From the IMG/VR virus record IMGVR_UViG_3300032331_003609, positions 1 to 64,000 of that record: a stretch of DNA of 64,000 bases. The stretch is one strand, 5' to 3'. Position 1 is the first letter of the stretch; each line of letters opens with the position of its first letter. The notes below the pieces were generated by a model. The model did not search any database. It saw nothing but the letters and a program-made list of their open reading frames with translations, and was not told the origin of the DNA. The translations under genes were made by a program, and so were the position numbers. Positions 1,158-64,000 of the stretch are shown here, piece by piece.

Positions 1158-1178
1158 GATAGCCTATCCATTCGGATA

Positions 1179-1212: not shown

Positions 1213-1245
1213 ACAGGATCACAGGATCACAGGATCACAAGATCA
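1208..1245. repeat. tandem repeat (GGATCACA)x4 plus partial copy
   Basis: Read directly; gives a GATC every 8 bp. Confidence 0.9.
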
Positions 1246-1322
1246 TTCATAAAGGAATTCATTAATGGGTGTTTATAAGACATCTAGAAAGAGATCTGAC
1301 CCGATGTTCCTAACCGCGTGCC

Positions 1323-2144: not shown

Positions 2145-2303
2145 AGCTCTTATATATGATCGGATCTCTCGGGTCTTCTTTTATTCTGAATATGAGGCGG
2201 TTTCTGAGATTATCCTCGCTATTTCTATAGGCGCGCTTTCCAGTGGACTGGAGATTCGGCCCCCAGCCCCCTTTCTGAATCAGAATGAAGATAAATAAGG
2301 GAT

Positions 2304-2894: not shown

Positions 2895-2921
2895 TAAATA
2901 TCCTATAATCTTTCCAGACCT

Positions 2922-3044
2922 ATGTGGCATCTAGCATGGCTTTACTTCTTATTAGGTGTGGATCTGACCCTGCTTTGGCAAATCTGGTCTAGATTCCGGC
3001 AGCATCCTGAAAATATTGGGGGTTCTTTGGAATCTCCAGATTAA
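2922..3044 (+). CDS. small membrane peptide (40 aa)
   Basis: Translated by hand: MWHLAWLYFLLGVDLTLLWQIW... Confidence 0.3.
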   Translation: MWHLAWLYFLLGVDLTLLWQIWSRFRQHPENIGGSLESPD

Positions 3045-3101
3045 TTAATTTTTTTTTGGAATATCCCTGACCATTCTAGCTATAAAAGATAAATTAGCTT
3101 T

Positions 3102-3266
3102 ATGTGGATATTATTTGGTATTTGTTCAGTCATTCTAGTGCTTGCCTTCCATGCTTTAGGAGAGGTAGCAGATCAAGAGACCCGCATCGATGAATTAGAA
3201 GAGAGATTAACCCGCTTAGAACAAGATGCAGTTAAAATCACATTCGATAGAGACAGAGTTATTTAA
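3102..3266 (+). CDS. small membrane/coiled-coil protein (54 aa)
   Basis: Translated by hand: MWILFGICSVILVLAFHALGEVADQETRIDELEERLTRLE... Confidence 0.55.
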   Translation: MWILFGICSVILVLAFHALGEVADQETRIDELEERLTRLEQDAVKITFDRDRVI

Positions 3267-3284
3267 TCTAAATAAAAAACAAAA

Positions 3285-3716
3285 ATGAGTCAAGTTAAAA
3301 TTTCAACAAGTGGCGGTGATATGATCGCAGACCTTTATGATGAGGCAACACCAGGCACGGTGGCGAATTTCTTAAAATTAGCAAATAGTGGATTCTATAA
3401 TGGACTCAACTTCCATCGGGTGATTCCTGGATTTATGGCTCAGGGTGGATGTCCTAACAAGAGAGGTGACGGCGGACCAGGTTGGACTATTCCGTGTGAG
3501 ACCGGAGGTGACAAACAATATCACGACCAAGGCGTGTTAAGTATGGCGCATGCTGGGCGTAATACAGGAGGCTCTCAATTCTTTATCTGCTTCAATCGCC
3601 AGGGAACCCAGCACCTAGATCGTAACCACACTTGCTTTGGCAAAGTGACGGAAGGATTGGACGTATTAAGCCAAATCACACAGGGTGATGACATACTTTC
3701 CATCTCGGTGATTTAG
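3285..3716 (+). CDS. ppiA: cyclophilin-type peptidyl-prolyl cis-trans isomerase
   Basis: FHRVIPGFMAQGG, GVLSMAHAG, GGSQFFIC and HTCFGKV motifs. Confidence 0.95.
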   Translation: MSQVKISTSGGDMIADLYDEATPGTVANFLKLANSGFYNGLNFHRVIPGFMAQGGCPNKRGDGGPGWTIPCETGGDKQYHDQGVLSMAHAGRNTGGSQFFICFNRQGTQHLDRNHTCFGKVTEGLDVLSQITQGDDILSISVI

Positions 3717-3725
3717 ATATATAAA
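3716..3725 (+). promoter_or_regulatory. putative late promoter GATATATAAA (one example of a recurring motif)
   Basis: The same motif precedes starts at 7422, 10093, 14879, 16992, 20609, 23483, 24150, 32265, 43420, 48911, 49835, 51183 and 63757, and on the minus strand at 21799 and 56455. Confidence 0.7.
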
Positions 3726-3741
3726 TGAAATAATAAAAAGA

Positions 3742-4425
3742 ATGAAGTATATTAAAATTTTTGAAGATTTCTCTACAGGCACATCTCTAAACGAAGAAGC
3801 TATGAAGGAAGTAACTCTTCCTGGGGGATTCATCAATCGTAATACCACTGATACGAACGCTAATGAAGGATCCCCAGATAAGCCTGGTGTGATTTATTTT
3901 GATACAAACACGACAACTCCTAGCAAAGCTACTGGATCCCCTGGTACTTTAACTGTTCATAGTGATGATGGTACCAAAGGAAGAAAGCAATTAGAATTTG
4001 CTGATAATAATTTTGTTGATAGTGATAGAATCATAAGCTATCATTATAAAGATTATGCTAAGATGCAATCCGGTGGTAATGAGCCTGATCCTACAATTTT
4101 AGCTAAGAACCCTGGTGAGGCAAAGGCTAAAGCGTACGAGATCCTAGGATGGGGTACTTTTGTTACTCCCACTTCAGGTGATCCTAAAGTTCTAGGAAAC
4201 ATGCTAAGATCCTATTTTGAAATTCGTAAGATGTATCCAGAATACGTAACCAAGAATTCCTTGTTTAAAGGATTTCTAGATGGCATCATCGAGGGGTATC
4301 CTAACGGGGATTTCGGTAGATTAAATCAGGTTGAAAGTTTTTCTGTTAATGTCAAGAATAAAAAATTCATGACAGAGGTCGGAGCAGTTCTAAGAGAAGT
4401 TGGTGTTATTAAAGACGCTAAATAA
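3742..4425 (+). CDS. hypothetical protein with N-terminal MKYIKIFEDF tag (putative virion-internal)
   Basis: Shared N-terminal motif; GATATATAAA upstream. Confidence 0.65.
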   Translation: MKYIKIFEDFSTGTSLNEEAMKEVTLPGGFINRNTTDTNANEGSPDKPGVIYFDTNTTTPSKATGSPGTLTVHSDDGTKGRKQLEFADNNFVDSDRIISYHYKDYAKMQSGGNEPDPTILAKNPGEAKAKAYEILGWGTFVTPTSGDPKVLGNMLRSYFEIRKMYPEYVTKNSLFKGFLDGIIEGYPNGDFGRLNQVESFSVNVKNKKFMTEVGAVLREVGVIKDAK

Positions 4426-6038: not shown

Positions 6039-7415
6039 ATGAAAAAGATCATTCCGTTTCTTCTTATTCTCCTTGTCTCTTGTACCAAAGAGGATATTCA
6101 GCCGCAGGCAAAACAAACAATAGTTTCAGATAGCGCTATCACAGGATATAAAGTTTCATCCAATGCTATATCCGATGGCCAATCTTACTGGGAAAATACA
6201 GGTGTTCCCCTAGATTTAATTGTTGACATCTTTCAAAGGGGTACACAGCCATTAAAAGACGGTGTATATGCTTATGCATCGACAACTCAAGCTCTGAGTG
6301 CTGGTGATTTCAATCTGGATGGATACATTGATGTTTTTAATGCCGGCACTCTGTGTAACGGATCGGGATCTAATCTTAGTTTTTTAATTTGGAACACTAA
6401 GACATTAACCTATGATGAGAAAAATCTTATTAATAACGGAACACGTAATATTGGAGGGCCAACAAAGACAGTTCCTGTCTATTTAAATGGCGATGCCTAC
6501 GTTGATCTAGTTATCTTTGGACATGTTGATGATTGTGCAGGATTTGGACCTAATGAGCCTACTACGATCTGTCTTAGCGATGGTAAAGGAGGCTATGATT
6601 TAACCTCATTAGTATTAGAACCTATCGCTCTCTCAAATAGATTCACCCACGAGGGCGGAGATATTGGAGATTTAAATGGAGACGGATTACCGGATCTTTT
6701 GATAGTTGCAAATTCACATTCGTATATTTTCTGGGGAATTAAAAATTATCCGTATTTTACCAATACCGGATATGCTCATTTTTCTTCGGATCAAAAGAAT
6801 TATCCTAGTAATAATGGATTTGGCGAGTCAGTGACAGAAGGGGCAGGATTTGTTTATACTGCTCATATTGCAGACGTAAACGGGGATGGTAAAAATGACC
6901 TTCTATTAGGATCTTCAGAAGGTTCTACGTCTCAAAATAGAATCATGCTTAATAAAGGAAATGGTAGATTTAACGATGCTGTTAAATTGCCTTACTATTC
7001 TAATAATTTTATTGGCATTGGTAACAAGGATTTCATAGTTGATGATATTAATAGTGATGGACTTCGTGATATTATAGTAGTTAACGACGAAGCATATAAA
7101 TCATGGAATCTAGTTCTTTACCTACAACAAAAGGATGGTTCATTTATTATAGACAAAACAGCCTTTGAATACACTATCAATAAATCATTTCCGAGAGGGG
7201 GAGATTGGAAATGCAATCTAATTTATAAAGATTTTAACGGGGACGGTAAAAAAGACATATCATATACAGATGCAGGTGTTTCTGCGTGGAATATCGCAGG
7301 AAATGGATTATCCACAAAAACCGTCTTTATCCGTTCAGGAAATGCATTTAAAGAACAATCCCTATATGATTTAGACCCGTATGCTAAATCCCTAAGCTCT
7401 AAGTTTCCAAAGTAG
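6039..7415 (+). CDS. FG-GAP/VCBS repeat lipoprotein (beta-propeller)
   Basis: LLVSC lipobox; repeated GD(F/L)NxDGxxD motifs (GDFNLDGYID, GDLNGDGLPD, ADVNGDGKND, DDINSDGLRD, KDFNGDGKKD). Confidence 0.85.
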   Translation: MKKIIPFLLILLVSCTKEDIQPQAKQTIVSDSAITGYKVSSNAISDGQSYWENTGVPLDLIVDIFQRGTQPLKDGVYAYASTTQALSAGDFNLDGYIDVFNAGTLCNGSGSNLSFLIWNTKTLTYDEKNLINNGTRNIGGPTKTVPVYLNGDAYVDLVIFGHVDDCAGFGPNEPTTICLSDGKGGYDLTSLVLEPIALSNRFTHEGGDIGDLNGDGLPDLLIVANSHSYIFWGIKNYPYFTNTGYAHFSSDQKNYPSNNGFGESVTEGAGFVYTAHIADVNGDGKNDLLLGSSEGSTSQNRIMLNKGNGRFNDAVKLPYYSNNFIGIGNKDFIVDDINSDGLRDIIVVNDEAYKSWNLVLYLQQKDGSFIIDKTAFEYTINKSFPRGGDWKCNLIYKDFNGDGKKDISYTDAGVSAWNIAGNGLSTKTVFIRSGNAFKEQSLYDLDPYAKSLSSKFPK

Positions 7416-8011: not shown

Positions 8012-9085
8012 ATGACAAACGAACAAATTCCTACAGGATGGCAGGGTGGATTTCCCTCTAAAGATCAAAAGAAAATGCTATATCCTACTACAGATTTAAC
8101 TGCATTACCTATGTTGGGTAATATGGATAACATTAATTTACTACAAAGACAATGGGGTGTTAAATGGCCAATGTTTAGTTGGAATACCCTAAATGGGGAA
8201 AAGGACCCAAAACGTTGTTATGTACAATTCGCTCCTTATATTTCAAGAATAGGATATACCAATGAAGGTAGAATTTATTCCATAATCTGTCCTCAACAAG
8301 GAATGTGGATTGGAGATGAGATTTGTATCAATGTGGAAGTAACAGTTACGGGACAAAGAGGATGGGTTAACGAAGACACAAAAGAGATTGCTGCTGATAT
8401 GATGGTTGAGGGAAAAATTTGGTTAACACCAGGTGAAAATCAAGGTGGTCTATTAAGAGCAATTTGGCCATTATTAAAATATAGTTCTCGCAAATACCCT
8501 ATTGACAAAGATAATGCTATTCGTGTTTTAACACATCTACCAGGAAATCCTAAAGAACCTATATTTCAACTCGGAAAGGGTTTATCACCAAGATTTAAAA
8601 ATCCACAATTTGCTGTACAGGAAGAAGCATATACAACAGGACATATCAATGTAGAAATAGGAGGAATGGTACCAACAAATGATCACAAATTAGATAAGTT
8701 TAATCAATACTTTTTAAATCTTTTTAACTTAGGTACGGGTAATATGTTACAAAAGGGTAATGTATTATCGTGGAATTTATTTTTTGATTCGCCTGAATTG
8801 GTTTCAGTTCCTGAATGGCAAAATCACGCTGACTATTGGCGTACTTCCATAGGTGCACATCACGGTTCACCCGGTGGGGAAGGAACAAGTCCAAGATATT
8901 TTGATGGAACATACTTTGACACTAAAAATTTCGCCATTAAAGAGGTTATTAAAGATATTTTAAACCACGTTGTAAAAAACCCCACGTTGAGGAAGGGTTT
9001 AATATTACTTGTAGAATATTGTCCTAAAACAATATTTGATATATTTTTAAAGAAGGGTGATCAATCTAAAACAAAAACACAATAA
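8012..9085 (+). CDS. hypothetical protein (357 aa)
   Basis: Long ORF rich in W, P and G; no family recognised. Confidence 0.7.
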   Translation: MTNEQIPTGWQGGFPSKDQKKMLYPTTDLTALPMLGNMDNINLLQRQWGVKWPMFSWNTLNGEKDPKRCYVQFAPYISRIGYTNEGRIYSIICPQQGMWIGDEICINVEVTVTGQRGWVNEDTKEIAADMMVEGKIWLTPGENQGGLLRAIWPLLKYSSRKYPIDKDNAIRVLTHLPGNPKEPIFQLGKGLSPRFKNPQFAVQEEAYTTGHINVEIGGMVPTNDHKLDKFNQYFLNLFNLGTGNMLQKGNVLSWNLFFDSPELVSVPEWQNHADYWRTSIGAHHGSPGGEGTSPRYFDGTYFDTKNFAIKEVIKDILNHVVKNPTLRKGLILLVEYCPKTIFDIFLKKGDQSKTKTQ

Positions 9086-9088
9086 ACT

Positions 9089-9325
9089 ATGGAAGAAGAA
9101 TTAATTGGGACAATTAAATTATTTGCAGGAGACTACGTTCCTCGGGGATATGCGGAATGCAACGGACAATTATTAGACATTAGTCAAAATCAGGCGTTAT
9201 ATGTATTACTGCAAGATAGATACGGGGCAACACCAAATTTATTTGCGGTACCTAAAATGACACCACCTATGGATGGTATGAAATACATAATAGCCACTAG
9301 TGGTATATGGCCAGCAAGACAGTAA
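9089..9325 (+). CDS. phage tail collar domain protein (microcystin-dependent protein-like)
   Basis: IGTIKLFAGDYVPRGYAECNGQLLDISQNQALYVLL...YG signature. Confidence 0.85.
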   Translation: MEEELIGTIKLFAGDYVPRGYAECNGQLLDISQNQALYVLLQDRYGATPNLFAVPKMTPPMDGMKYIIATSGIWPARQ

Positions 9326-9349
9326 TAATATAACAAAAACAAATACAAA

Positions 9350-10090
9350 ATGACAAAAGACGAAATAGTTTACAATGTTTCATTATCGGATATTGTATAC
9401 AAAGAAGTGTCTGATATAAATTTTAAAGATTTAGGACTTTCTCTTATTAAATGGATAGACCACAAAAAATCCGACACACAAGGATTTGTAGCAATAAAAG
9501 ATAATATGGTCTATGTTGTATGGAGAGGAAGTTCTAGCAAGAAAGATTTCCAGAATGATGCTTCCGTTGATAAAGTTCCTTTTTTAAAAGAAGGTGAGAA
9601 AGTTCATATAGGATTTTTATCATCCTGGGATAGTGTGAAAGATATTACATTCAGTAGTTTAGATGCTGCAATTAAAAAAATTAAGTCCGACGAGATTAAT
9701 ATAACTGTATGTGGACATAGTTTAGGTGCTGCGGTTTCTACCCTATCTGCATATGCTATCAAGTACAAATATCCGGATGCTGATATTAAATGCTGCAATA
9801 TTGGATCTCCGAGGGTTGGAAATAAAAAATTCAAAGAGAATTACAATTCGTCAGGAATTAAAACTATGAGGATAGTCCATAATAATGATGTTGTAACAAG
9901 ATCCCCTAAAATTGGATATCATCACGTTGACACGGAATTAAGAATTGATAGTGACGGGAATGTTAAAAAATGGATGATTGATTGGCAAAGAGCTTGGGGT
10001 TTTATTAAAGATCTATTTAGAGGCCAAACAATTAAAGATCATATGACGGGAGGTTACATAAGTTCTGTTAATAAATGGAGCAGTAAATAA
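9350..10090 (+). CDS. class 3 lipase
   Basis: VVWRGS, VHIGF, GHSLGAA nucleophile elbow, GSPRVGN and NDVVT motifs. Confidence 0.9.
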   Translation: MTKDEIVYNVSLSDIVYKEVSDINFKDLGLSLIKWIDHKKSDTQGFVAIKDNMVYVVWRGSSSKKDFQNDASVDKVPFLKEGEKVHIGFLSSWDSVKDITFSSLDAAIKKIKSDEINITVCGHSLGAAVSTLSAYAIKYKYPDADIKCCNIGSPRVGNKKFKENYNSSGIKTMRIVHNNDVVTRSPKIGYHHVDTELRIDSDGNVKKWMIDWQRAWGFIKDLFRGQTIKDHMTGGYISSVNKWSSK

Positions 10091-10118
10091 AGAATATATA
10101 GATAAAATTATTATAAAG

Positions 10119-11339
10119 ATGAAGTATTTAGCAGAATTTGAATCTTGGAAATCTGGATTTGCCACAACTATTAATGAGCAAGAAACTGGGACAGGTAAAG
10201 GATTTATCGTGGTTTTCGGATCAACTGATAACGACAATCTTAAAGCAGGAGCAGCAGAACCATTAGGATTCAAAGAAAACGAGGTTATAACTGGATCTAT
10301 TAAAGGTATTGATAGCATGCTTAAAATTGGTTCTGCTAAATCGTTCGAAAATGCTAACCATCCCGGAAAAACTGTTAAGCCTGGGTATGATTATCTTAAT
10401 GTGAGTGCGGATGGCAAGAAATACTCAATTAAAGAAAGAGGTGCATTAAAGATTCCTTTCACTAAAGATACTGTGTTAGAAATAGAAGGAGCGGGCAATG
10501 GATTATTAGCTTTAATGAGAGCTCTTTATTATTTAAATGTTTCAGTTACTCAAAACAAATTCGATTATAATGTTCCATTCGATGGTACGCTGTTCATTAA
10601 AATAGGTGAGACTACAAGAAAAGGTTTATCATTAAGCGTCAACGGAAAATATACCGGGCCGGCTGGAATTAGAATGAGCGAGGGGTATGCTGATATTGCG
10701 AAAAAATTTATTAAAGAATCGGTGGATTTAGGCGAAGCACCCAAGCAGGATAATTCGGTAGAACAGATAATAACCGTTGCAGATACTATTGCTGATGCAA
10801 TCAAAGCATCCCATTTTTATAAAATGAAACAGCAATATAAGTCATTCTTCAGTGCTTATAATGGATTTCGCGATATGTATGATATTTCTAAAGATTATAC
10901 ATGGACAAAAGGTAACGAATTTCAAGAAAAGGGATCATTCTTTCTTGCGGTTGCTTTCCAATATTGTATAGCTACGCTTTCTTACTATTATCCAATGGAT
11001 CTTTCTAAGATCTATAAAATAGATCTTGAGCCATATGCAAAGAAAATAATGGATGGTCAGGGATCGGATCTAACTAAATTCGATGAACAATCGATCAGAA
11101 CCCAGATTGCTGCGATGTTTAAACAGTTTGAACCTAAGGAATTAAAGGATTACCCCGAATTTAAAGACCAATTACCTAAATACTGGGCAGTTGTTACTAA
11201 TGCAGTAATAGATAGAATAATCCTCACCATGCCGTCTACATATAAAGCGGCAATGAGTCCAAATAGAATCGGAACAAGAGTACCAGCTAAAGGGGGAATA
11301 CAAACAGGTAAAACTGAATTCGGATCAGGTAAGATCTAA
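10119..11339 (+). CDS. hypothetical protein with MKYLAEFESW tag
   Basis: 406-aa ORF, shared N-terminal motif, AATATATAGA upstream. Confidence 0.7.
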   Translation: MKYLAEFESWKSGFATTINEQETGTGKGFIVVFGSTDNDNLKAGAAEPLGFKENEVITGSIKGIDSMLKIGSAKSFENANHPGKTVKPGYDYLNVSADGKKYSIKERGALKIPFTKDTVLEIEGAGNGLLALMRALYYLNVSVTQNKFDYNVPFDGTLFIKIGETTRKGLSLSVNGKYTGPAGIRMSEGYADIAKKFIKESVDLGEAPKQDNSVEQIITVADTIADAIKASHFYKMKQQYKSFFSAYNGFRDMYDISKDYTWTKGNEFQEKGSFFLAVAFQYCIATLSYYYPMDLSKIYKIDLEPYAKKIMDGQGSDLTKFDEQSIRTQIAAMFKQFEPKELKDYPEFKDQLPKYWAVVTNAVIDRIILTMPSTYKAAMSPNRIGTRVPAKGGIQTGKTEFGSGKI

Positions 11340-11699: not shown

Positions 11700-12671
11700 A
11701 TGAAAATTCTAATCACAGGGGGAGCTGGTTATTTAGGCTCTGTTATCACTGGAAAAATGCTAAACGCGGGGCACGAAGTTGTCGTTTTAGATAAATTGAT
11801 ATTCAATCAAACATCTCTGCTGGTTTACACCTCAAACCCTAATTTTAGATTCATTCACGGAGATGTTAGGAATGAGTCATTATTTGAAAGACTTTGCAAC
11901 GAGGCTGATGCAATTATTCCATTAGCTGCAATTGTAGGATTTCCTGCTTGCGATGCTGAACCTGAATTAGCCGAGGAAATTAACTTTAACCAAATATCCA
12001 ATATTGTTAGATTTACCAAGGATAAAGGTAAAAAAATATTATACCCTAATACTAATAGCGGATACGGCATCGGTGTGGGACAAACAGAATGTACAGAGGA
12101 ATCCCCATTAAACCCTATATCGATTTACGGTAAAACAAAATGCCATGCTGAAGATTTATTAAAATCAAGTACCGATGCTATCATTTTTAGATTAGCAACG
12201 GTATTTGGAGTTTCTCCAAGAATGAGAACTGATTTATTAGTTAACGATTTCACGTACAAGGCTATTACTGACAAATACATTGTGGTTTTTGAGAAGAACT
12301 TTAAAAGAAATTTTATTCATATCCAAGACGTTGCAAACGTGTTCTTGTTTATGTTAGAAAATTATGAGAAATATAAAGGCGAGATTTATAATGTTGGATT
12401 GACTACTGCAAATCTAAGCAAACAAGAATTGCTTGAAAAAATACAAAATCACGTTAAGAACTTTGCTGTTTCGTATAATGACTATTATGAGGATCCAGAT
12501 AAAAGAGATTATATAGTATCAAATGCAAAAATTGAATCAACTGGCTGGTCTCCCGAGTGGGATATAGATAGAGGAATAAAAGAATTGATAATGGGTTACC
12601 AGATGATTGTACCAAAAATGGGCGCAGAATTCCGAAATGGCTTTCCATTGGGATACGCAAATAATATGTAG
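11700..12671 (+). CDS. NAD-dependent NDP-sugar epimerase/dehydratase (extended SDR)
   Basis: TGGAGYLGS Rossmann motif, YGKTK catalytic YxxxK, RLATVFG, RNFIHIQD. Confidence 0.9.
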   Translation: MKILITGGAGYLGSVITGKMLNAGHEVVVLDKLIFNQTSLLVYTSNPNFRFIHGDVRNESLFERLCNEADAIIPLAAIVGFPACDAEPELAEEINFNQISNIVRFTKDKGKKILYPNTNSGYGIGVGQTECTEESPLNPISIYGKTKCHAEDLLKSSTDAIIFRLATVFGVSPRMRTDLLVNDFTYKAITDKYIVVFEKNFKRNFIHIQDVANVFLFMLENYEKYKGEIYNVGLTTANLSKQELLEKIQNHVKNFAVSYNDYYEDPDKRDYIVSNAKIESTGWSPEWDIDRGIKELIMGYQMIVPKMGAEFRNGFPLGYANNM

Positions 12672-12672
12672 T

Positions 12673-13218
12673 ATGAGCAACAAGTGGGACGAGTTTATAG
12701 AAACTCCATCAAAAAAATTCGGATATGAAGTTCCGATCTTTACACCTTCAATCTATAGAGAATATAGGGGAGAAATCTTTACTACGTTTCATAGTGAAGA
12801 ACATCCAGTAATGAGCCACATTCATTATGAGAAAAACGAAATTAGCATTCATGGAAGATTCTCGAAATCTTATAAGGGTGTATTAAGGGGATTGCACTAC
12901 GATAATAAAACTTGGAAATTAGTTCAAGCTGCAGTTGGAGACATTTATTTAATCGTGTTGGATATGAGAAAGCAATCCTCAACATTTGGAGATTGGGAAT
13001 CATTTATGATCACGGAGAAAGATCGTAATCAAGTTCTAGTTCCTCCAGGATTTGCTAATGGACATTATGCTTTAACTGATTGTATGTTCCATTATAATCT
13101 ATTTTATAAAGATGGATACGTTGATGCTGACGAACAAGGAGTGATTAAATGGAATGATCCCGAATACCAAATGGAATGGCCAACAGATAAACCAATATTA
13201 CAAAAAAGAGATCGATGA
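12673..13218 (+). CDS. rmlC: dTDP-4-dehydrorhamnose 3,5-epimerase-like cupin
   Basis: EYRGEIF, GVLRGLHY, VLDMRKQSSTFG, VPPGFANGH, IKWNDP; start moved to MSNKW. Confidence 0.85.
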   Translation: MSNKWDEFIETPSKKFGYEVPIFTPSIYREYRGEIFTTFHSEEHPVMSHIHYEKNEISIHGRFSKSYKGVLRGLHYDNKTWKLVQAAVGDIYLIVLDMRKQSSTFGDWESFMITEKDRNQVLVPPGFANGHYALTDCMFHYNLFYKDGYVDADEQGVIKWNDPEYQMEWPTDKPILQKRDR

Positions 13219-13847
13219 TAAAAAATTTAGACAAATACCCAATAGTCAACGATGGGATTTACACCAAAGAAGAATTATCAAAATTTGAAAGATTAATTGC
13301 TGATCATTGGGAAGCAGGGAGAATTAAAGGACCCGTACATCTTAGCGGTGGAAACGAAGATCAACTAATAGAGATAGGTAAAAGAATTAAACCTACTGAT
13401 TGGGTTTTTTCCACATGGAGATCTCACTATCATGCTTTGATTAAAGGTGTATGTCCAGTTTGGTTGGAGGAAGAAATTATTGCTGGAAGATCTATCACAA
13501 TAGTAAGTCAGGAAGAAAGATTTTATGCATCCGCTATAGTTGGTGCAATAATTCCTATAGCAACCGGTGTTGCTCTTTCTAATAAAAGAGAAAAAAGAAA
13601 CAATAAGGTTTGGTGCTTCGTTGGTGATATGGCTTTTGAGACTGGAGGATTTTACGAGATGCATAAGTATGCTAAAAACCTAAATCTCCCAATCGTATTT
13701 GTTATAGAAGATAATCACGTTTCAACTAATACACCAACAATAGAAACCTGGGGAGGAATCAAAAGAGAAATTCCAGATAATGTTATCTGGTATGAATATG
13801 AAAAAGAATGGCCACATTACGGAACAGGAAAATGGGTAGTTTTTTAA
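13215..13847 (+). CDS. ThDP-dependent enzyme, E1-alpha-like subunit
   Basis: GPVHLSGGNE, WRSHYHAL and the GDMAFETG...VIEDN ThDP-binding motif. Confidence 0.85.
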   Translation: MIKNLDKYPIVNDGIYTKEELSKFERLIADHWEAGRIKGPVHLSGGNEDQLIEIGKRIKPTDWVFSTWRSHYHALIKGVCPVWLEEEIIAGRSITIVSQEERFYASAIVGAIIPIATGVALSNKREKRNNKVWCFVGDMAFETGGFYEMHKYAKNLNLPIVFVIEDNHVSTNTPTIETWGGIKREIPDNVIWYEYEKEWPHYGTGKWVVF

Positions 13848-13865
13848 ATTTAATAAAATAAGAAT

Positions 13866-14414
13866 ATGAGTCAACCAGAATATACACCTTACAAAGATGC
13901 CCTAACCAATTCAATGACATTTCTTGGGGAACAACCAGATACTGTTTTTATCGGACAACAGCTTCTCTGGCACGGAAATCCGATGAGTACTACAATCGGT
14001 AATGTCTCAAAGGACAAGATGATTGAAGTTCCTGTAATGGAAGAATCACAAATGGGAATGTCATTAGGAATGGCAATGGCAGGGGATTTTGTTATCACAT
14101 TTTATCCTAGATGGGATTTTTTAATCTGTGCAACAAATCAATTGGTAAACCATGTTGATAAGATAAATTTAATGAGCCAGGGAAAATGGGATGCTAATAT
14201 GATTATTAGGTTAGGAAAAGGATCAGATAAGCCTTTAGATCCTGGGCATCAGCATAGAGGTAATTATTTGACAGAATTTAAATCGATGTGTCCGAATATT
14301 AATTTCCACAATCTTAATAAATGGAATGATATTGAAGAGATCTACAAGAATGCATACGAAAATGGGGGTATCCACGTTATAGTAGAATACCCCGAGCTAT
14401 ATTACATTCAATAA
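13866..14414 (+). CDS. ThDP-dependent enzyme, E1-beta/transketolase pyrimidine-binding subunit (short)
   Basis: IEVPVMEESQMGMSLGMAMAG, DFLICATNQLVNHVDK and GHQH motifs; lacks the C-terminal E1-beta domain. Confidence 0.8.
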   Translation: MSQPEYTPYKDALTNSMTFLGEQPDTVFIGQQLLWHGNPMSTTIGNVSKDKMIEVPVMEESQMGMSLGMAMAGDFVITFYPRWDFLICATNQLVNHVDKINLMSQGKWDANMIIRLGKGSDKPLDPGHQHRGNYLTEFKSMCPNINFHNLNKWNDIEEIYKNAYENGGIHVIVEYPELYYIQ

Positions 14415-14816
14415 TTACCAGCTAATTTCCCAATCACTGAAGTCTGCGGCTAAGCAATCGATTTTATAATCTTTTCTTCCTCCGACTATTTCTTGGATCT
14501 TGTTCTTTGCAGTATTTCTTATCCCGTTTAATCCGTGTGTAAGTTCTAGATTATTTCCGTCCTTTATCCCCTTTCGGTAATTTGATTCATTGTGCCAGAT
14601 GTGAAGATTCATTTGTGAAAGAACCACTATAGCTCTGATTGTATCTGCATTTACCTTTTCGCTGGAATCTAGCAAAACCTGAATATCATGGACAATGTCC
14701 TTAATCTCCTCTGAATATTCATCCTTATGTTGCGGTATAAAGACCTCTTTTAATTGTGAAATGCTTAACCTGTCGACCAATTCTGCCAATGTGGGTAGAT
14801 ATTTTCTTTCTGCCAT
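14415..14816 (-). CDS. hypothetical helical protein
   Basis: 133-aa ORF convergent with the sugar operon. Confidence 0.65.
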   Translation of the reverse strand: MAERKYLPTLAELVDRLSISQLKEVFIPQHKDEYSEEIKDIVHDIQVLLDSSEKVNADTIRAIVVLSQMNLHIWHNESNYRKGIKDGNNLELTHGLNGIRNTAKNKIQEIVGGRKDYKIDCLAADFSDWEISW

Positions 14817-14894: not shown

Positions 14895-15209
14895 ATGAAA
14901 CATCTAAAAGTGTACGAATCATATTCAGACGGAGAGAATATAACATTAACTTCCAGACAGAACAGAGAAATAACTTTCTCTGTTAAAGGGGGAAGAATAG
15001 AATCCATAGAAAATAACTCAGGAATTAGATTCCCTTATTCTGTTGGTCAATCTTATAATATGGGAATGAAAACCTGGGCATGCAATAATGGATTTAAATG
15101 GAACGGCAAAGATCCTTGCCCAGAAGAGAAAATATTTGGAATTAAAAAAGAAGATATACCACAGGGACACGAACTAAGAATGATGTTCCCACACAAATTT
15201 AGAAATTAA
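14895..15209 (+). CDS. hypothetical protein with MKHLKVYESY tag
   Basis: Shared motif; GATATATAGA at 14879. Confidence 0.65.
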   Translation: MKHLKVYESYSDGENITLTSRQNREITFSVKGGRIESIENNSGIRFPYSVGQSYNMGMKTWACNNGFKWNGKDPCPEEKIFGIKKEDIPQGHELRMMFPHKFRN

Positions 15210-17227: not shown

Positions 17228-18907
17228 ATGTACATACTAGGTATATCAGCTTATTACCATGACTCTGCTGCGTGTCTATTCAGAAACGGAACTCTGATCG
17301 GTGCAGCTGAGGAAGAAAGATTTACTGGAATAAAGGGAGACAAAGCATTTCCAAATAAAACAATAGATTGGCTTTTGAGCTCCAATGGAATTAACATCTC
17401 TGACGTATCAACAGTTTGCTGGTATGAAAATCCGGATCTAAAGAGGGATAGGGTATTAAAAACATTTAAAAGAAACCCGATTAAAAATTGGAAAAGAATA
17501 ATCAAGCATTTTACGTGGGGTAATTTTCCAAAGCTTTGGAAGATACTCAACGAGGAAATAGGATTTTTTGGAAAAATTCACGTTGTCGATCATCATCTAT
17601 CTCATGCATCCCTTGCATATTTCACATCATATTTTGAAGAATGTAATATAGTAACCGTAGACGGCGTAGGAGAACATGAGACAATTACAATATCTAAGGC
17701 TTCCCAAAATAAAATAACCAAATTAGCATCAATAAATTATCCACATTCATTGGGTCTATTCTACTCTGCATTCACAGCATACCTTGGATTTAAACCCAAT
17801 GAGGGGGAATACAAGCTTATGGGCCTAGCAGCATACGGGGACCCTGACATATACAGAGAAAGAATTAAAAAAACAATAGCATTTAAAGAAGGCGAATTAT
17901 ATGTTGATATGAAATATTTTTCATGGGATTATTCTGATGAGATAATGTTCAATGAAAATCTTTGCGAGCTTTTAGAAATCCCGCCAAGAATTAGTACAGA
18001 CCCTTTAGATGATCAATATAAGCACATAGCGGCTGCCGTTCAGAAGATCTATGAAGAAATATTGTTTGATGTATTAAACCACAGCTACGAGCTTAATAGG
18101 AGCAGTAATCTTTGTTTAGGTGGGGGATGTGCTTATAACGGAGTAGCTAATGCTGGTATTCAAAAAAATACACCTTACAAAAAGATTTGGATACCGCTTT
18201 CCCCCTCTGATAGCGGATCAGCTATAGGTGCCTGCCTCCATTACATTAATATCAAAAAAGGGCAAAAAAGAAAAGGTGCATTCGAAGCATATCAGGGTCC
18301 ATCTTTTGGAATTAATGAAATAAGATCTGCTCTTTTGAAATATGGTAACAAAGTAGATTGGGAACACATGGAAACCTCAGCTCTTATAAAAAAATCTGCC
18401 AATCTTCTGAACAATGGAAATGTCTTTGGTTGGTTCCAGGGAAAAATGGAATTTGGTGCTAGAGCATTGGGAAACAGATCTATATTGGCTTCTCCTATAT
18501 TTCCAGGTATGCAAGATAGAATAAATTCTGTTATTAAGAAGAGAGAACTTTTTAGACCATTTGCACCATCCGTTTCTTTTGACAAAGCAAATCTTTATTT
18601 CGATATAGATTCGCCCGTCCCGTATATGAATATGGTGGTTAAAGTTAAACCCGGGTGGAATCTGCCTGCTATAACACACGTAGATGGTACTGCAAGGGTA
18701 CAGACTGTTACATCATTCGAAAATCCAAGATATCACAGATTACTAAAAGAAATGGAAGAATTATCAGGGTATCCAATATTATTAAATACCTCTTTTAATT
18801 TTAAGGATCAGACCATTACCCTTTATCCCGAGGATGCAATTATAAGATTTTTAGATTCAGAAATGGACTACTTAGTCTTGGGTAATTTCTTCGTTTCCAA
18901 AAAATAG
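17228..18907 (+). CDS. carbamoyltransferase, NodU/CmcH/TobZ family
   Basis: HDSAA, EEERF, HHLSHA, DGVGE, GEYKLMGLAAYG, GGCAYNG, EFGARALGNRSIL, RPFAPS, HVDGTARVQTV and LNTSFN motifs. Confidence 0.95.
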   Translation: MYILGISAYYHDSAACLFRNGTLIGAAEEERFTGIKGDKAFPNKTIDWLLSSNGINISDVSTVCWYENPDLKRDRVLKTFKRNPIKNWKRIIKHFTWGNFPKLWKILNEEIGFFGKIHVVDHHLSHASLAYFTSYFEECNIVTVDGVGEHETITISKASQNKITKLASINYPHSLGLFYSAFTAYLGFKPNEGEYKLMGLAAYGDPDIYRERIKKTIAFKEGELYVDMKYFSWDYSDEIMFNENLCELLEIPPRISTDPLDDQYKHIAAAVQKIYEEILFDVLNHSYELNRSSNLCLGGGCAYNGVANAGIQKNTPYKKIWIPLSPSDSGSAIGACLHYINIKKGQKRKGAFEAYQGPSFGINEIRSALLKYGNKVDWEHMETSALIKKSANLLNNGNVFGWFQGKMEFGARALGNRSILASPIFPGMQDRINSVIKKRELFRPFAPSVSFDKANLYFDIDSPVPYMNMVVKVKPGWNLPAITHVDGTARVQTVTSFENPRYHRLLKEMEELSGYPILLNTSFNFKDQTITLYPEDAIIRFLDSEMDYLVLGNFFVSKK

Positions 18908-62514: not shown

Positions 62515-63741
62515 ATGGTCTGGAATTACAAAGACACATTGCTAGTTCACGTTGAGCTTTCTAATATGTGTAATGCTGCTTGTCCGCTTTGTCCAAGATA
62601 CGTGAATAACTCATTAAGAGTCAATCCCGAGCTTGATTTGGGTAGTGTTTCATTAGAAGATTTTAAAAAATGGTTCCCCTTAGATTTTGTTCAGAAAAGT
62701 AAAAGCTGGATATTTTGCGGAACCAATGGTGATCCTATAATGGCAAGGGATGTTTACGAAATACTGGAATATGTACTTCGCAATTCGGAAGCGAAGGTTC
62801 AGGTAAACACTAACGGATCCATCAGAGATGGGGAATTTTGGGAAAAAATGGGAGCATTATTTGCAGAACCCTGTGTCAATAGTAGATACGTTGTTTTTTC
62901 AGTCGATGGATTGGAAGACACAAATCACATCTATAGAAGAAACGTCAAATGGGATAGGGTGATGGAAAATATGGGAGCATATTCCAAATCGGGTTCTACC
63001 GGAATTTGGGATTTTTTAATATTTAAACACAACGAACATCAGTTAGATGAGGCAGAGGCACTTTGTAAAAAAATAGGATTAGCGTTTTCTCCAAAAAGAC
63101 CTTTCGGGTTTGAGACAGGAAACCCAGATGAATATCAGGATCTAATGGTTTATGATTTAGATGGCAATTTTTTATACAGGATAGAACCTGCTAGCGAAGA
63201 GTGGAGATTAAACAGATCCCTCAATAAATTTCAAAAAGGGGAAGAAAAAATATGGGTTCCCGGGAAGGAGAAAAAAAGTAAGGATCAGACAGAAGAAAAA
63301 TGGAACGGATTAATAGAAAGAGATCTTCCTAAATATCAATTTCCAGAAAGATTCAAGGGAAAATCTGTTAGCTGTAAATCATGCCATCCTATAGGAAAGG
63401 AAATATACGTTGACTGTAAGGGTAATGTTATGCCTTGCTGTTTTGTAGGAACAATGTACAATAGTGATTTTCAACACCACGAAGCATTGCAGATCAAAAA
63501 GCACTTACAAGATTGGGGGTTAGATAAAATAAATTTAAACAACCATTCTCTTGAAGAAATATTAGACAGCAAGTATTTAGACGATGTATTTGCAAATAGA
63601 TGGGATGGTGCTAAAAAGGATGAGGATAAAATGGGATATTGTTTCAATACATGTTCGGTTGATCATATGAAAGACCTTTTCGTTAGAAAGGAGGAATTAC
63701 CTATATCCCCGGAAAAACACGAGATAAAAAGTCTTATATAG
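62515..63741 (+). CDS. radical SAM protein with SPASM/twitch domain
   Basis: CNAACPLC (CxxxCxxC), GTNGDP, SVDGL; C-terminal C...IYVDCKGNVMPCC...CFNTC. Confidence 0.9.
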   Translation: MVWNYKDTLLVHVELSNMCNAACPLCPRYVNNSLRVNPELDLGSVSLEDFKKWFPLDFVQKSKSWIFCGTNGDPIMARDVYEILEYVLRNSEAKVQVNTNGSIRDGEFWEKMGALFAEPCVNSRYVVFSVDGLEDTNHIYRRNVKWDRVMENMGAYSKSGSTGIWDFLIFKHNEHQLDEAEALCKKIGLAFSPKRPFGFETGNPDEYQDLMVYDLDGNFLYRIEPASEEWRLNRSLNKFQKGEEKIWVPGKEKKSKDQTEEKWNGLIERDLPKYQFPERFKGKSVSCKSCHPIGKEIYVDCKGNVMPCCFVGTMYNSDFQHHEALQIKKHLQDWGLDKINLNNHSLEEILDSKYLDDVFANRWDGAKKDEDKMGYCFNTCSVDHMKDLFVRKEELPISPEKHEIKSLI

Positions 63742-63769: not shown

Positions 63770-64000
63770 ATGAACAATACTATAAATTTAGTTTATGATG
63801 ATTGGCCATTAGATCAGGATCATCCCAATCCTAATGGTGATAAATATTTTCCCGAACCTAATGCGTGGATGACAGGAGATGGTCCGATGGAAACCCTTAG
63901 ATATGATAATTATGTTCACAGAAGAATGGAGGACGTTGATAAGTATCAAGAGGAAAATTTCTTCTATGTTGTTTGGCATAGGCATTCTCTATACAATAGA
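63770..64000 (+). CDS. hypothetical protein, truncated by window edge
   Basis: ATG after GATATATAAA; open to the end of the window. Confidence 0.6.
   Translation, partial: MNNTINLVYDDWPLDQDHPNPNGDKYFPEPNAWMTGDGPMETLRYDNYVHRRMEDVDKYQEENFFYVVWHRHSLYNR

What the first reader, a model, noticed from the sequence alone, without database searches (positions are those of the whole stretch)
11700..14816. Phage operon for a branched-chain NDP-sugar rather than pyruvate dehydrogenase
Seen: SDR epimerase, RmlC, a short E1-alpha-like and a truncated E1-beta-like gene are abutting or overlapping, with no E2/E3. Established: ThDP enzymes in NDP-sugar clusters (YerE for yersiniose; two-component E1-like systems for acetyl-branched sugars) transfer a C2 unit from pyruvate to a 4-keto sugar. 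Inference: the phage makes an unusual C-branched sugar for virion, host-surface or DNA glycosylation. Automated annotation would mislabel this as a PDH auxiliary metabolic gene.
Basis: partly seen in the sequence, partly recalled or inferred. Interest (0 to 1): 0.6.

Follow-up and report, generated by a model that had tools for sequence, protein, structure and literature searches.

The report
Phage mini-E1 sugar-branching gene cassette
A freshwater jumbo phage carries four tightly packed genes that most likely oxidise a host GDP-sugar to a 4-keto form, epimerise it and add a carbon branch with a stripped-down thiamine enzyme; the pair looks like pyruvate dehydrogenase E1 but is not one.

Summary
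Window 11700-14414 (+) holds four packed genes: an SDR (323 aa), an RmlC-like cupin (true start 12673, 181 aa), a 210-aa E1-alpha-like protein (ThDP diphosphate-binding, PP, domain only) and a 182-aa E1-beta-like protein (pyrimidine-binding, PYR, domain only). 14415-14816 is a separate convergent gene. The 245-kb phage record has no E2, lipoyl or Transketolase_C domain.

The "not PDH, but sugar pathway" reading is well supported:
- The SDR is 57% identical to PDB 6VO6, which I recall as C. jejuni Cj1427, a GDP-heptose C4-dehydrogenase.
- The cupin is closest to GDP-4-keto-heptose 3/5-epimerases.
- Alpha and beta travel together in 49 viral loci and in 75 of 80 bacterial or archaeal loci.
- They sit beside either a Cj1427-like or a GDP-mannose-dehydratase-like gene, and in cells beside GDP-heptose genes.
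- They are fused in cyanophages S-SM2 and P-TIM68.
- They form a clade apart from canonical E1-alpha.

C-acyl branching at C4 is inferred, not shown. The likely nucleotide is GDP, not dTDP or CDP. This "mini-E1" architecture differs from the full-length AviB1/Pau11 type and appears uncharacterised.

The parts
11700..12671 (+). Extended SDR, 323 aa: predicted GDP-sugar C4-dehydrogenase (Cj1427/MlghA-like) that makes the 4-keto intermediate
   Evidence: PF01370, E 1e-35. It is 57% identical over residues 2-310 to PDB 6VO6, E 3e-104; the next best PDB hit is E 1e-23. Homologues of about 50% identity sit between GmhA and GmhB, next to an HddC-like gene, in Herbaspirillum. dN/dS is 0.02-0.11.
12673..13218 (+). 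RmlC-like cupin, 181 aa: predicted GDP-4-keto-sugar 3- or 3,5-epimerase
   Evidence: PF00908, E 2e-32. The best PDB hits are C. jejuni GDP-4-keto-heptose epimerases (DdahB, MlghB, Cj1430 types) at E 4e-34, against 5e-23 for dTDP RmlC. H75, K82, N129, H131, Y141 and D180 match DdahB H67, K74, N121, H123, Y134 and D173. Y132 is F139 here and I56 is S64. The start at ATG 12673 is supported by gene calls in relatives.
13215..13847 (+). Mini-E1 alpha, 210 aa: the ThDP diphosphate-binding (PP) domain only
   Evidence: PF00676 positions 7-170 of 300. TIGR03182 scores 94 bits against a cut-off of 394. G137-D138-M139...N167 aligns to the Mg-ThDP motif of human E1-alpha and is conserved in 66 sequences (position 138 is D or E); H42, E48, R69, H71, Y72 and H201 are invariant. 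AF2 pLDDT is 91.8; the best fold match is human E1-alpha, covering about 40% of the target.
13866..14414 (+). Mini-E1 beta, 182 aa: the ThDP pyrimidine-binding (PYR) domain only, without the C-terminal domain
   Evidence: PF02779 only. E59 aligns with the cofactor-activating Glu and H130 with the active-site His region of E1-beta. E59, Q129 and H130 are invariant in 60 sequences. AF2 pLDDT is 92.6; TM-score is 0.86 normalised to the query and 0.49 to human E1-beta.
14415..14816 (-). Convergent 133-aa ORF of unknown function; a conserved neighbour of beta whose membership in the system is uncertain
   Evidence: Weak PF25006 hit, below the cut-off. It is 66-98% identical and lies next to beta in many viral loci, and it is present in a few cellular loci (L059, L067). 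The Atlas returns only viral hypothetical proteins.
17228..18907 (+). NodU/CmcH-type carbamoyltransferase; a possible tailoring enzyme with an uncertain link to the cassette
   Evidence: PF02543 and PF16861; phrog_1601. A homologue lies within 10 kb of alpha in about 25 of the viral loci.
62515..63741 (+). Radical SAM/SPASM protein immediately upstream of the relocated tailoring module
   Evidence: PF04055 and PF13186. Its link to the pathway rests on adjacency alone.
63770..64000 (+). Start of an 831-aa ORF that runs past the window end. It is the first gene of a tailoring module that in related phages lies between alpha and beta.
   Evidence: tblastn of the relatives' insert genes against the phage record gives, in genome coordinates:
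- 63770-66265: 45% identity to the relatives' 850-aa insert gene (cluster c14)
- 66262-67959: SDR + 2OG-oxygenase fusion, 52%
- 67956-68930: SDR, 81%
- 68923-69834: unknown protein, 43%
- 69827-71272 (-) and 71850-73235 (-): radical SAM
- 73235-74677 (-): family-7 glycosyltransferase

Best explanation
The four genes form a translationally coupled cassette that remodels a host-supplied GDP-sugar (GDP-D-glycero-D-manno-heptose or GDP-mannose).
1. The Cj1427-like SDR oxidises C4 to a ketone without removing O6.
2. The cupin epimerises C3, or C3 and C5, next to that ketone.
3. The two mini-E1 proteins assemble into a minimal PP+PYR ThDP enzyme. It decarboxylates a 2-oxo acid (pyruvate is the default guess) and adds the resulting acyl-anion equivalent to the C4 carbonyl.

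The product would be a 4-C-acyl-branched (for example 4-C-acetyl) GDP-sugar with a tertiary alcohol. In the minimal cassette this takes the place of the C4-reductase step of the Campylobacter heptose pathways. Tailoring genes 50 kb away would finish and transfer the sugar to a virion or cell-surface acceptor. These genes are SDRs, a 2OG oxygenase fusion, radical SAM enzymes and a family-7 glycosyltransferase.

Shown: gene identities, conserved cofactor residues, co-occurrence, fusion, and separation from canonical E1.
Inferred: subunit assembly, the acceptor (C4 keto), the donor, the product and its biological use.
For: Gene identities.

Not a PDH:
- Alpha lacks the C-terminal 40% of E1-alpha, and beta lacks Transketolase_C.
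- There is no E2 or lipoyl domain in the record.
- Herbaspirillum and nine other genomes hold full-length canonical E1-alpha (205-346 bits) besides the mini form (56-74 bits).
- 66 mini-alphas form one clade, SH-aLRT 100 and branch length 3.5, apart from seven canonical E1-alphas.

Functional linkage:
- Beta lies within 0-8 kb of alpha in essentially all 49 viral loci with enough flank, and adjacent in 75 of 80 cellular loci.
- PHROG 34187 and the cyanophage S-SM2 and P-TIM68 genes are alpha-beta fusions.

Linkage to a 4-keto generator:
- 38 viral loci carry the Cj1427-like SDR.
- 8 others carry a GDP-mannose-4,6-dehydratase-family gene between alpha and beta instead. None carries both.
- 41 of 80 cellular loci carry the Cj1427-like SDR.

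GDP-heptose link:
- The Herbaspirillum cluster holds HddA-like, HddC-like, GmhA and GmhB genes around alpha and beta.
- 56 of 80 cellular loci carry at least one such gene.
- S-SM2 and P-TIM68 have GmhA, kinase and nucleotidyltransferase genes.

Other points:
- The cassette has no C4 reductase, so the ketone needs another fate.
- ThDP/Mg and catalytic residues are invariant, and dN/dS is 0.02-0.27.
- Precedent: E1-like pairs attach a pyruvate-derived C2 unit to 4-keto sugars in the paulomycin, avilamycin and everninomicin pathways (PMC4802897, PMC4425429, PMC10338323).
- The phage has no sugar nucleotidyltransferase or GmhA but does encode a bona fide GDP-mannose 4,6-dehydratase elsewhere, so it draws on host GDP-sugars.
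Against: - No member of the mini-E1 family has a measured activity that I could find.
- The precedent enzymes are full-length (Pau11 325 aa, Pau12 345 aa), and I could not obtain them for comparison.
- The alpha-beta complex test could not be run.
- That 6VO6 is Cj1427 rests on my recollection and on the deposited molecule name. No tool confirmed it.
- Many cellular clusters also carry a DegT aminotransferase and a B12-radical SAM enzyme. These could use the same 4-keto intermediate, leaving another role for alpha and beta.
- Only 17 of 80 cellular loci have an RmlC-like gene.
- Heptose-versus-hexose markers in the cupin are mixed: H131 is heptose-like and S64 is RmlC-like.
- No glycosyltransferase lies next to the cassette in the window.
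Confidence: 0.6

Rival explanations
1. The pair belongs to the same GDP-sugar pathway but performs different ThDP chemistry. It might decarboxylate a sugar-borne 2-oxo acid (for example a 6-keto-uronate made from heptose) to an aldehyde that an aminotransferase then aminates. It might instead perform a ketol-type transfer that lengthens or shortens the side chain.
For: - E1-type enzymes are by ancestry 2-oxo-acid decarboxylases.
- A DegT aminotransferase directly follows beta in Herbaspirillum and occurs in 45 of 80 cellular loci.
- A UDP-glucose/GDP-mannose dehydrogenase-family gene lies near the cassette in L003.
- The cyanophage genes are annotated as transketolase-like and sit with a class II aldolase.
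Against: - The minimal cassette in this window and in L006-L011 has only the C4-dehydrogenase and the epimerase as partners. It has no uronate-forming enzyme and no aminotransferase.
- The only partner class found in nearly all viral loci is a 4-keto generator, in two alternative forms.
- Similarity to transketolase is far weaker than to E1, and no transketolase N-terminal family was hit.
Confidence: 0.25
2. It is a genuine pyruvate, acetoin or branched-chain 2-oxo-acid dehydrogenase E1. The phage would carry it as an auxiliary metabolic gene that plugs into the host E2/E3 to redirect central carbon flow.
For: - The best Pfam, NCBIfam, PDB and fold hits are PDH or BCKDH E1 alpha and beta.
- Source databases name relatives PDH or acetoin dehydrogenase E1 alpha.
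Against: - Scores are far below the equivalog cut-offs: 94 against 394 bits for alpha, 38 against 321 for beta.
- Alpha lacks the C-terminal region, and beta lacks the E2-binding C-terminal domain.
- There is no E2 or lipoyl domain in the phage.
- The family forms a separate clade from canonical E1-alpha of the same genomes.
- It is consistently embedded in nucleotide-sugar genes.
Confidence: 0.03
3. The ThDP pair makes a small diffusible product (acetaldehyde, acetoin or an acyloin) that is unrelated to the neighbouring sugar genes. On this view the adjacency is only a shared 'moron' island.
For: - Minimal PP+PYR enzymes elsewhere (for example two-subunit decarboxylases, ranks 35 and 40) act on small molecules.
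- The region between alpha and beta is a hot spot for gene insertion.
Against: - The cupin stop overlaps the alpha start, here and in relatives.
- Co-occurrence with 4-keto generators holds across viruses, bacteria and archaea.
- The inserted genes are themselves sugar-tailoring types: SDRs, GMD-like genes and 2OG oxygenases.
Confidence: 0.07
4. The short alpha and beta genes are decaying remnants of a captured PDH operon and have no function.
For: Both are roughly half the length of canonical subunits.
Against: - More than 5,600 relatives have the same length.
- dN/dS is 0.02-0.27.
- Cofactor residues are invariant.
- AF2 models are confident and compact.
- RNA-library contigs identical to parts of the operon exist.
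Confidence: 0.02

Closest known systems
E1-like two-component enzymes of branched deoxysugar pathways (AviB1/AviB2 avilamycin, Pau11/Pau12 = Plm8/Plm9 paulomycin, EvdU5/EvdS3 everninomicin)
   Same: - A separate alpha and beta pair of PDH-E1 type, encoded inside a sugar pathway that makes a 4-keto sugar.
- They are proposed, and for Plm8/9 and AviB1/B2 genetically supported, to add a pyruvate-derived C2 unit at C4 (PMC4802897, PMC4425429, PMC10338323).
   Different: - Those subunits are full-length (325 and 345 aa), actinomycete, and act on dTDP- or UDP-linked or already-attached sugars.
- Here the subunits are 210 and 182 aa (PP-only and PYR-only) and GDP-linked by context, and they occur in phages, bacteria and archaea.
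- Sequence relationship to AviB1 or Pau11 was not tested, because the sequences were not obtainable.
YerE / ErwE / MyGE (acetolactate-synthase-type ThDP carboligases for yersiniose, erwiniose and related sugars)
   Same: The predicted chemistry is the same: ThDP-bound acyl anion added to the C4 ketone of a nucleotide sugar. Donors can be longer than pyruvate (PMC9306805).
   Different: - YerE-type enzymes are single polypeptides of the pyruvate-oxidase/AHAS superfamily and act on CDP-3,6-dideoxy-4-keto-glucose.
- The phage enzyme is a two-subunit E1/transketolase-type fold.
Campylobacter jejuni capsular heptose modification pathway (Cj1427/MlghA, Cj1430/MlghB, Cj1428/MlghC)
   Same: - The first two steps match: a C4-dehydrogenase homologue (57% identity to 6VO6) followed by a GDP-4-keto-heptose 3/5-epimerase homologue.
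- The chemistry is described in PMC10680097 and PMC7949155.
   Different: - The third enzyme, the C4 reductase, is absent from the cassette. The mini-E1 pair stands in its place.
- The phage lacks the GDP-heptose supply genes.
Heterotetrameric 2-oxo-acid dehydrogenase E1 (PDH, BCKDH, acetoin dehydrogenase)
   Same: PP and PYR domain folds, the Mg-ThDP motif, the activating Glu, and the beta-subunit His.
   Different: - There is no alpha C-terminal region, no beta C-terminal domain and no E2/E3 partner.
- The family is a separate clade with a different genomic context.
Cyanophage S-SM2 SSM2_198 and P-TIM68 'transketolase central region-containing protein' (PHROG 34187, unknown function)
   Same: Homologous at 42-44% (alpha part) and 33-34% (beta part), and embedded in a phage nucleotide-sugar/heptose cluster.
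   Different: There the two domains are fused in one polypeptide of 381-402 aa, with a Zn-alcohol dehydrogenase upstream and the phage's own GmhA, kinase and nucleotidyltransferase genes. Here they are split, and the supply genes are absent.

Membership tests
2-oxo-acid dehydrogenase E1 (PDH/BCKDH/acetoin), heterotetrameric type | Mg-ThDP binding motif (GDG...N) in alpha and the activating Glu in beta | tested here: met
   Alpha G137-D138-M139...N167 aligns to human D167...N196. Beta E59 aligns to the E1-beta Glu. Both are conserved in 66 and 60 sequences respectively (position 138 is D or E).
2-oxo-acid dehydrogenase E1 (PDH/BCKDH/acetoin), heterotetrameric type | Full-length alpha (about 320-370 aa), including the C-terminal region that carries the loops and His used in reductive acylation of lipoyl-E2 | tested here: not met
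   Alpha is 210 aa and matches only PF00676 positions 7-170 of 300. Fold matches cover about 40% of E1-alpha. An invariant H201 near the C-terminus might substitute, but this was not tested.
2-oxo-acid dehydrogenase E1 (PDH/BCKDH/acetoin), heterotetrameric type | Beta C-terminal Transketolase_C domain (the E2 docking site), with E2 and lipoyl partners | tested here: not met
   Beta has PF02779 only. There is no PF02780, PF00198 or PF00364 in the 245-kb record.
2-oxo-acid dehydrogenase E1 (PDH/BCKDH/acetoin), heterotetrameric type | Scores above the curated equivalog cut-offs and clusters with canonical E1-alpha | tested here: not met
   94 against 394 bits (TIGR03182) and 38 against 321 bits (NF006667). 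It forms a separate clade, SH-aLRT 100.
Sugar-pathway E1-like C2-branching enzymes (AviB1/B2, Pau11/12 type) | Adjacent alpha and beta E1-like genes inside a nucleotide-sugar cluster that contains a 4-keto-sugar-forming enzyme | tested here: met
Sugar-pathway E1-like C2-branching enzymes (AviB1/B2, Pau11/12 type) | Full-length E1 architecture (about 325 and 345 aa) and orthology to AviB1/AviB2 | tested here: not met
   Lengths are 210 and 182 aa, against Pau11 325 aa and Pau12 345 aa. Orthology itself was not tested, because the reference sequences were not obtainable with these tools.
Sugar-pathway E1-like C2-branching enzymes (AviB1/B2, Pau11/12 type) | Transfer of a pyruvate-derived two-carbon unit to C4 of a 4-keto sugar | not testable with these tools
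   This needs an enzyme assay.
Cj1427/MlghA-type GDP-heptose C4-dehydrogenase | Close full-length sequence similarity to the solved enzyme | tested here: met
   57% identity, E 3e-104, to 6VO6 over residues 2-310. That 6VO6 is Cj1427 is my recollection and was not confirmed by any tool.
Cj1427/MlghA-type GDP-heptose C4-dehydrogenase | Tightly bound NADH re-oxidised by 2-oxoglutarate (ping-pong), with GDP-heptose as substrate | not testable with these tools
   The property is described in PMC10680097. Context with GmhA, GmhB and HddC in cellular homologues is consistent with it.
GDP-4-keto-heptose 3/5-epimerase (DdahB/MlghB/Cj1430) within RmlC cupins | Catalytic His, Lys, Tyr and Asp of RmlC-type epimerases | tested here: met
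   H75, K82, Y141 and D180 are present, as are N129 and H131. The Y132 equivalent is Phe.
GDP-4-keto-heptose 3/5-epimerase (DdahB/MlghB/Cj1430) within RmlC cupins | Heptose-accommodating pocket (Ile56 and His123 in DdahB) | tested here: inconclusive
   His is kept (H131), but the Ile56 position is Ser (S64), as in hexose-specific RmlC.
Transketolase / split transketolase | Transketolase N-terminal PP domain family and C-terminal domain | tested here: not met
   There is no PF00456 or PF02780 hit. Only a weak transketolase NCBIfam hit was found (30 bits against 488).
YerE-type ThDP flavoenzyme carboligase | A single polypeptide of about 580 aa with TPP_enzyme_N, M and C domains | tested here: not met
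   There are two short subunits of E1 type. The only trace is a weak TPP_enzyme_C hit on the PP domain.

The most novel reading that the evidence does not exclude
The mini-E1 pair (PP-only alpha plus PYR-only beta) defines an uncharacterised, very widespread enzyme family. The word search found more than 5,600 relatives, in phages, many bacterial phyla and archaea.

Together with Cj1427-like C4-dehydrogenases, the family would build GDP-linked C4-acyl-branched higher-carbon sugars, for example a C9 sugar from heptose. These would be a glycan building block not yet described for freshwater and marine microbes or their phages.

In phages the cassette is the fixed core of a hypervariable sugar-tailoring island. 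The phage would use it to decorate its virion or to re-dress the infected cell surface.
Probability: 0.4. Interest if true: 0.75.

Novelty: new variant of a known kind. Interest (0 to 1): 0.62.

Why it matters
- Annotation: automated pipelines call these genes PDH or acetoin-dehydrogenase E1, or transketolase fragments. That would inflate counts of 'central-carbon' auxiliary metabolic genes in viromes.
- Enzymology: if the prediction holds, this is the smallest E1-type ThDP carboligase known. It would be an attractive biocatalyst for tertiary alcohols, and E1-type enzymes are absent from the 2025 review of ThDP enzymes forming tertiary alcohols that I searched.
- Glycobiology: it would point to an undescribed class of GDP-linked branched heptose or hexose sugars on abundant freshwater and marine microbes (Nitrospira, Pelagibacterales, Patescibacteria, Woesearchaeota) and their phages.
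- Phage biology: such sugars bear on phage receptors, serotype-like diversity and phage-host arms races.
- The conserved core with a swappable tailoring insert is also a neat example of modular pathway evolution in phage genomes.

Tried and rejected
- blastn of the region against 50,697 phage records found no match. Only protein-level matches exist.
- The psbA search was negative, so this is not a typical cyanomyovirus. The major capsid protein is gp23-like and 41-45% identical to Lak and other jumbo phages.
There is therefore no verdict on binding. Assembly is inferred from the fusions and from family knowledge.
- I tried to confirm that 6VO6 is Cj1427 from papers. PMC7509852 and PMC7500870 are not held, and a text search for the code gave only irrelevant hits.
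- The avilamycin paper PMC544256 is not held. AviB1 and Pau11 sequences could not be fetched, so they are missing from the tree. The tree rows were 66 mini-alphas and 7 canonical E1-alphas. Only the quick IQ-TREE search finished. One canonical row (L142) was cut short by my start-codon trimming.
- Literature searches for heptose plus ThDP, for an O-antigen E1 component, and for a cyanophage 'transketolase central region' gene found no description of this family.
- The Coxiella O-antigen lead gave nothing relevant and was dropped.
- The phosphonopyruvate or sulfopyruvate decarboxylase idea (two small ThDP subunits plus aminotransferase plus nucleotidyltransferase) was rejected. The Pfam families and domain order differ, and no PEP mutase was seen among the Herbaspirillum cluster ORFs scanned.
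- The promoter and terminator scan showed nothing above the shuffled expectation.
- Atlas and PHROG searches left the convergent ORF 14415-14816 unexplained.
- The large profile search (search of protein representatives) was deliberately not used. No alternative genetic code was needed. No read-tool refusals occurred.

Full report
OBSERVATION. The stretch 11700-14414 carries four ORFs on the + strand.
- An extended SDR, 11700-12671, 323 aa: PF01370, E 1e-35.
- An RmlC-type cupin: PF00908, E 2e-32.
- A 210-aa protein, 13215-13847, matching only positions 7-170 of the 300-position E1_dh profile.
- A 182-aa protein, 13866-14414, matching only Transket_pyr.

The cupin ORF is listed from TTG 12607. 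Gene calls in relatives start one base after the SDR stop, which corresponds to ATG 12673 here. The alpha start overlaps the cupin stop (ATGA). The alpha-beta gap is 18 bases. The whole 244,850-bp virus record has no E2 catalytic domain, no lipoyl domain and no Transketolase_C domain.

WHAT CARRIES IT. The window is the first 64 kb of an IMG/VR virus record that CheckV rates 86% complete. It has a gp23-type major capsid protein that is 41-45% identical to those of Lak and other jumbo phages, and it has no psbA. Near-identical DNA occurs in freshwater and lake metagenomes from at least seven studies. Contigs from a metatranscriptomic library match 12973-13216, 13870-14184 and 15038-15188 with 0-1 differences. 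This is compatible with transcription but does not prove it, because DNA can be present in such libraries.

THE TWO UPSTREAM ENZYMES. The SDR is 57% identical over its whole length to PDB 6VO6 (E 3e-104); the next best solved structure scores E 1e-23. I recall 6VO6/6VO8 as Cj1427 (MlghA) of Campylobacter jejuni, and the deposited molecule name fits, but I could not confirm it with the tools. [quoted passage not shown] It yields a 4-keto sugar that keeps O6.

The cupin's best solved relatives are the C. jejuni GDP-4-keto-heptose 3- and 3,5-epimerases (E 4e-34), ahead of dTDP-RmlC (5e-23). Their catalytic residues H67, K74, Y134 and D173, together with N121 and H123, are present here as H75, K82, Y141, D180, N129 and H131. 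Y132 is Phe here and Ile56 is Ser, so heptose-versus-hexose preference stays open (PMC7949155).

THE E1-LIKE PAIR.
- Alpha keeps the Mg-ThDP motif (G137-D138-M139...N167, aligned to human D167...N196) and the E1-alpha HL..G.E and R.H motifs.
- Beta keeps the cofactor-activating Glu (E59) and the Q129-H130 pair in the E1-beta active-site His region.
- Across 66 alpha and 60 beta sequences from viruses, bacteria and archaea these residues are invariant, or D/E at position 138. A C-terminal P200-H201-x-G-x-G motif of alpha is also invariant.
- AlphaFold models are confident (pLDDT 91.8 and 92.6). They match human PDH E1-alpha and E1-beta but cover only about 40% and 49% of those chains.

The pair is therefore the bare PP+PYR catalytic core. 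It lacks the alpha C-terminal region, and it lacks the beta C-terminal domain that docks E2. Scores are far below the NCBIfam equivalog cut-offs. Pairwise dN/dS of all four genes against relatives is 0.02-0.27.

COMPARATIVE GENOMICS. The word search found more than 5,600 relatives of alpha, the best 120 at 74-90% identity and 185-212 aa. Where named at all, they are called PDH or acetoin dehydrogenase E1 alpha.

Viral loci:
- In 49 IMG/VR loci, beta accompanies alpha wherever enough flank is present. The cupin usually sits directly upstream.
- Only a few loci (L006-L011) share the window's compact form. In most others, 1-8 kb of extra genes lie between alpha and beta. These are further SDRs, 2OG-Fe(II) oxygenases, radical SAM enzymes and several families without Pfam matches.
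- Eight loci lack the Cj1427-like SDR. They carry a GDP-mannose-4,6-dehydratase-family gene between alpha and beta instead. No locus has both. These are two alternative ways to make a GDP-4-keto sugar.

Cellular loci:
- The 80 best genome loci include Nitrospira, Massilia, Herbaspirillum, Methylocystis, Pelagibacterales, Verrucomicrobiota, Patescibacteria, Chloroflexota and Woesearchaeota.
- Beta is adjacent to alpha in 75 of them, and a Cj1427-like SDR (at least 40% identity) lies within the locus in 41.
- HddA-like kinase, HddC-like guanylyltransferase, GmhA and GmhB occur in 49, 44, 21 and 16 loci.
- In Herbaspirillum lusitanum the order is B12-radical SAM, GHMP kinase, SDR, alpha, beta, DegT aminotransferase, HddC-like, GmhA, Cj1427-like SDR, GmhB, GT4, methyltransferase. 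This follows an rml/O-antigen-type block.

Fusions: in cyanophages S-SM2 and P-TIM68 the two domains are fused in one protein (PHROG 34187, function unknown). That protein sits inside a cluster with GmhA, a sugar kinase, nucleotidyltransferases, epimerases and glycosyltransferases.

NOT A DEHYDROGENASE E1. Ten cellular genomes that carry the mini form were searched for E1_dh. Canonical matches score 205-346 bits over the full profile. The mini forms score 56-74 bits over positions 4-180. In a quick maximum-likelihood tree the 66 mini-alphas form one clade, SH-aLRT 100 and branch length 3.5, apart from seven canonical E1-alphas taken from those genomes. For PDH/BCKDH-type E1 of the same genomes it is not met.

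THE REST OF THE PATHWAY IN THIS PHAGE.
- The record has no sugar nucleotidyltransferase and no GmhA, so the starting GDP-sugar must come from the host.
- The tailoring genes that relatives keep between alpha and beta are present, but 50 kb away. They start at 63770, inside the window, and run to about 74.7 kb.
- That module holds an 831-aa unknown protein, an SDR-2OG oxygenase fusion, an SDR (81% identical to the relatives' copy), a 303-aa unknown protein, two radical SAM enzymes and a family-7 glycosyltransferase.
- A third sugar locus at 180-186.5 kb holds a bona fide GDP-mannose 4,6-dehydratase (463 bits), two SDRs, a GT1-like protein and a methyltransferase. This independently shows that the phage works on GDP-sugars.

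MECHANISM PROPOSED.
1. Host GDP-heptose or GDP-mannose is oxidised at C4 by the SDR.
2. The cupin epimerises it at C3, or at C3 and C5.
3. The mini-E1 heteromer captures the product. It decarboxylates a 2-oxo acid and adds the ThDP-bound acyl anion to the C4 ketone, giving a 4-C-acyl tertiary alcohol.

The Campylobacter pathway resolves the ketone with a C4 reductase. The cassette has none, and alpha/beta stand in that position.

The chemistry has precedent. YerE-type enzymes have been characterised biochemically (PMC9306805). E1-like pairs are supported genetically in paulomycin and avilamycin and proposed in everninomicin (PMC4802897, PMC4425429, PMC10338323). Those pairs are full-length (325 and 345 aa).

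Subunit assembly, acceptor, donor, product and biological use are inferences. I put the sugar-pathway assignment at about 0.85-0.9 and the specific C4-acyl-branching chemistry at about 0.55-0.6.

The sugar's destination is open. Host-surface remodelling or virion glycosylation is more likely than DNA modification, for which GDP-sugars have no precedent that I know of.

NOVELTY. Genes of this family are visible in databases and in two cultured cyanophages, but under misleading or empty names. I found no biochemical or structural study of the minimal architecture. I rate it a new variant of a known kind.

LIMITS. The identity of 6VO6 is from memory. Reference sequences of the actinomycete enzymes could not be fetched. 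The RNA evidence consists of contigs only. 

Noticed in passing
window 14415-14816 (-): A 133-aa helical ORF convergent with beta and abutting it with no spacer. It is 66-98% identical next to beta in many viral loci, about 80% identical in loci where alpha is only 48% identical (L052/L053), and present in a Flavobacteriales MAG (L059) and an archaeal MAG (L067). Only a sub-threshold DUF7783 hit was found. It may be a partner of the pathway or a conserved phage gene.
   Followed up: partly
window 17228-18907 (+): A NodU/CmcH-type carbamoyltransferase lies 2.8 kb downstream. Homologues lie within 10 kb of alpha in about half of the related viral loci, on either side. It may O-carbamoylate the sugar.
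   Followed up: partly
window 63770-64000 and beyond (genome 63770-74677): The tailoring genes that related phages keep between alpha and beta have moved about 50 kb away in this phage, next to a family-7 (beta-4-galactosyltransferase-like) glycosyltransferase. The alpha-beta gap in relatives is a hot spot for gene-cassette exchange.
   Followed up: partly
genome 180000-186530 (outside the window; locus L161): A third sugar locus: DUF5672, a GT1-like protein, a methyltransferase, two SDRs and a bona fide GDP-mannose 4,6-dehydratase (463 bits), followed by a NUDIX protein.
   Followed up: partly
window 41874-43113 (+): A CTP_transf_3 cytidylyltransferase (the family that activates Kdo and nonulosonic acids) followed by an NT5C-type 5'-nucleotidase. 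This suggests a further, CMP-linked sugar activity in the phage.
   Followed up: no
window 26490-29069 (+): An 859-aa protein with C-type lectin, LCCL and cohesin domain matches. It is possibly a carbohydrate-binding fibre or adhesin.
   Followed up: no
window 1-4000: G+C is 0.42-0.45 here against about 0.33 in the rest of the window. The stretch holds a 2OG-Fe(II) oxygenase (1323-2144, -) and a cyclophilin-type prolyl isomerase (3285-3716).
   Followed up: no
window 47237-48898, 57499-58722 (-), 62515-63741: A TROVE/Ro60-like RNA-binding protein, a tryptophan-halogenase-family flavoenzyme, and a radical SAM/SPASM protein. GC skew changes sign at about 52-62 kb, where the genes switch to the minus strand.
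   Followed up: no
window 6039-7415, 9350-10090: An FG-GAP repeat protein and a class-3 lipase lie upstream of the cassette. The upstream neighbours (8012-11339) have no homologues in the related viral loci, so that flank is variable.
   Followed up: no
L057 (contig VHCC01000006.1, labelled Candidatus Pelagibacterales MAG): This 23-kb contig carries the SDR at 82%, the cupin at 77% and alpha at 64% identity, in the phage gene order. It may be a phage contig binned with a bacterial MAG, or a hint to the host.
   Followed up: no
L086, L092, L095-L136 (Nitrospira, Massilia, Herbaspirillum and others): A conserved cassette of about ten genes recurs across distant phyla: B12-radical SAM, HddA-like kinase, SDR, mini-E1 alpha and beta, DegT aminotransferase, HddC-like, GmhA, Cj1427-like SDR and GmhB. 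It appears to encode an undescribed heptose-derived amino or branched sugar.
   Followed up: partly
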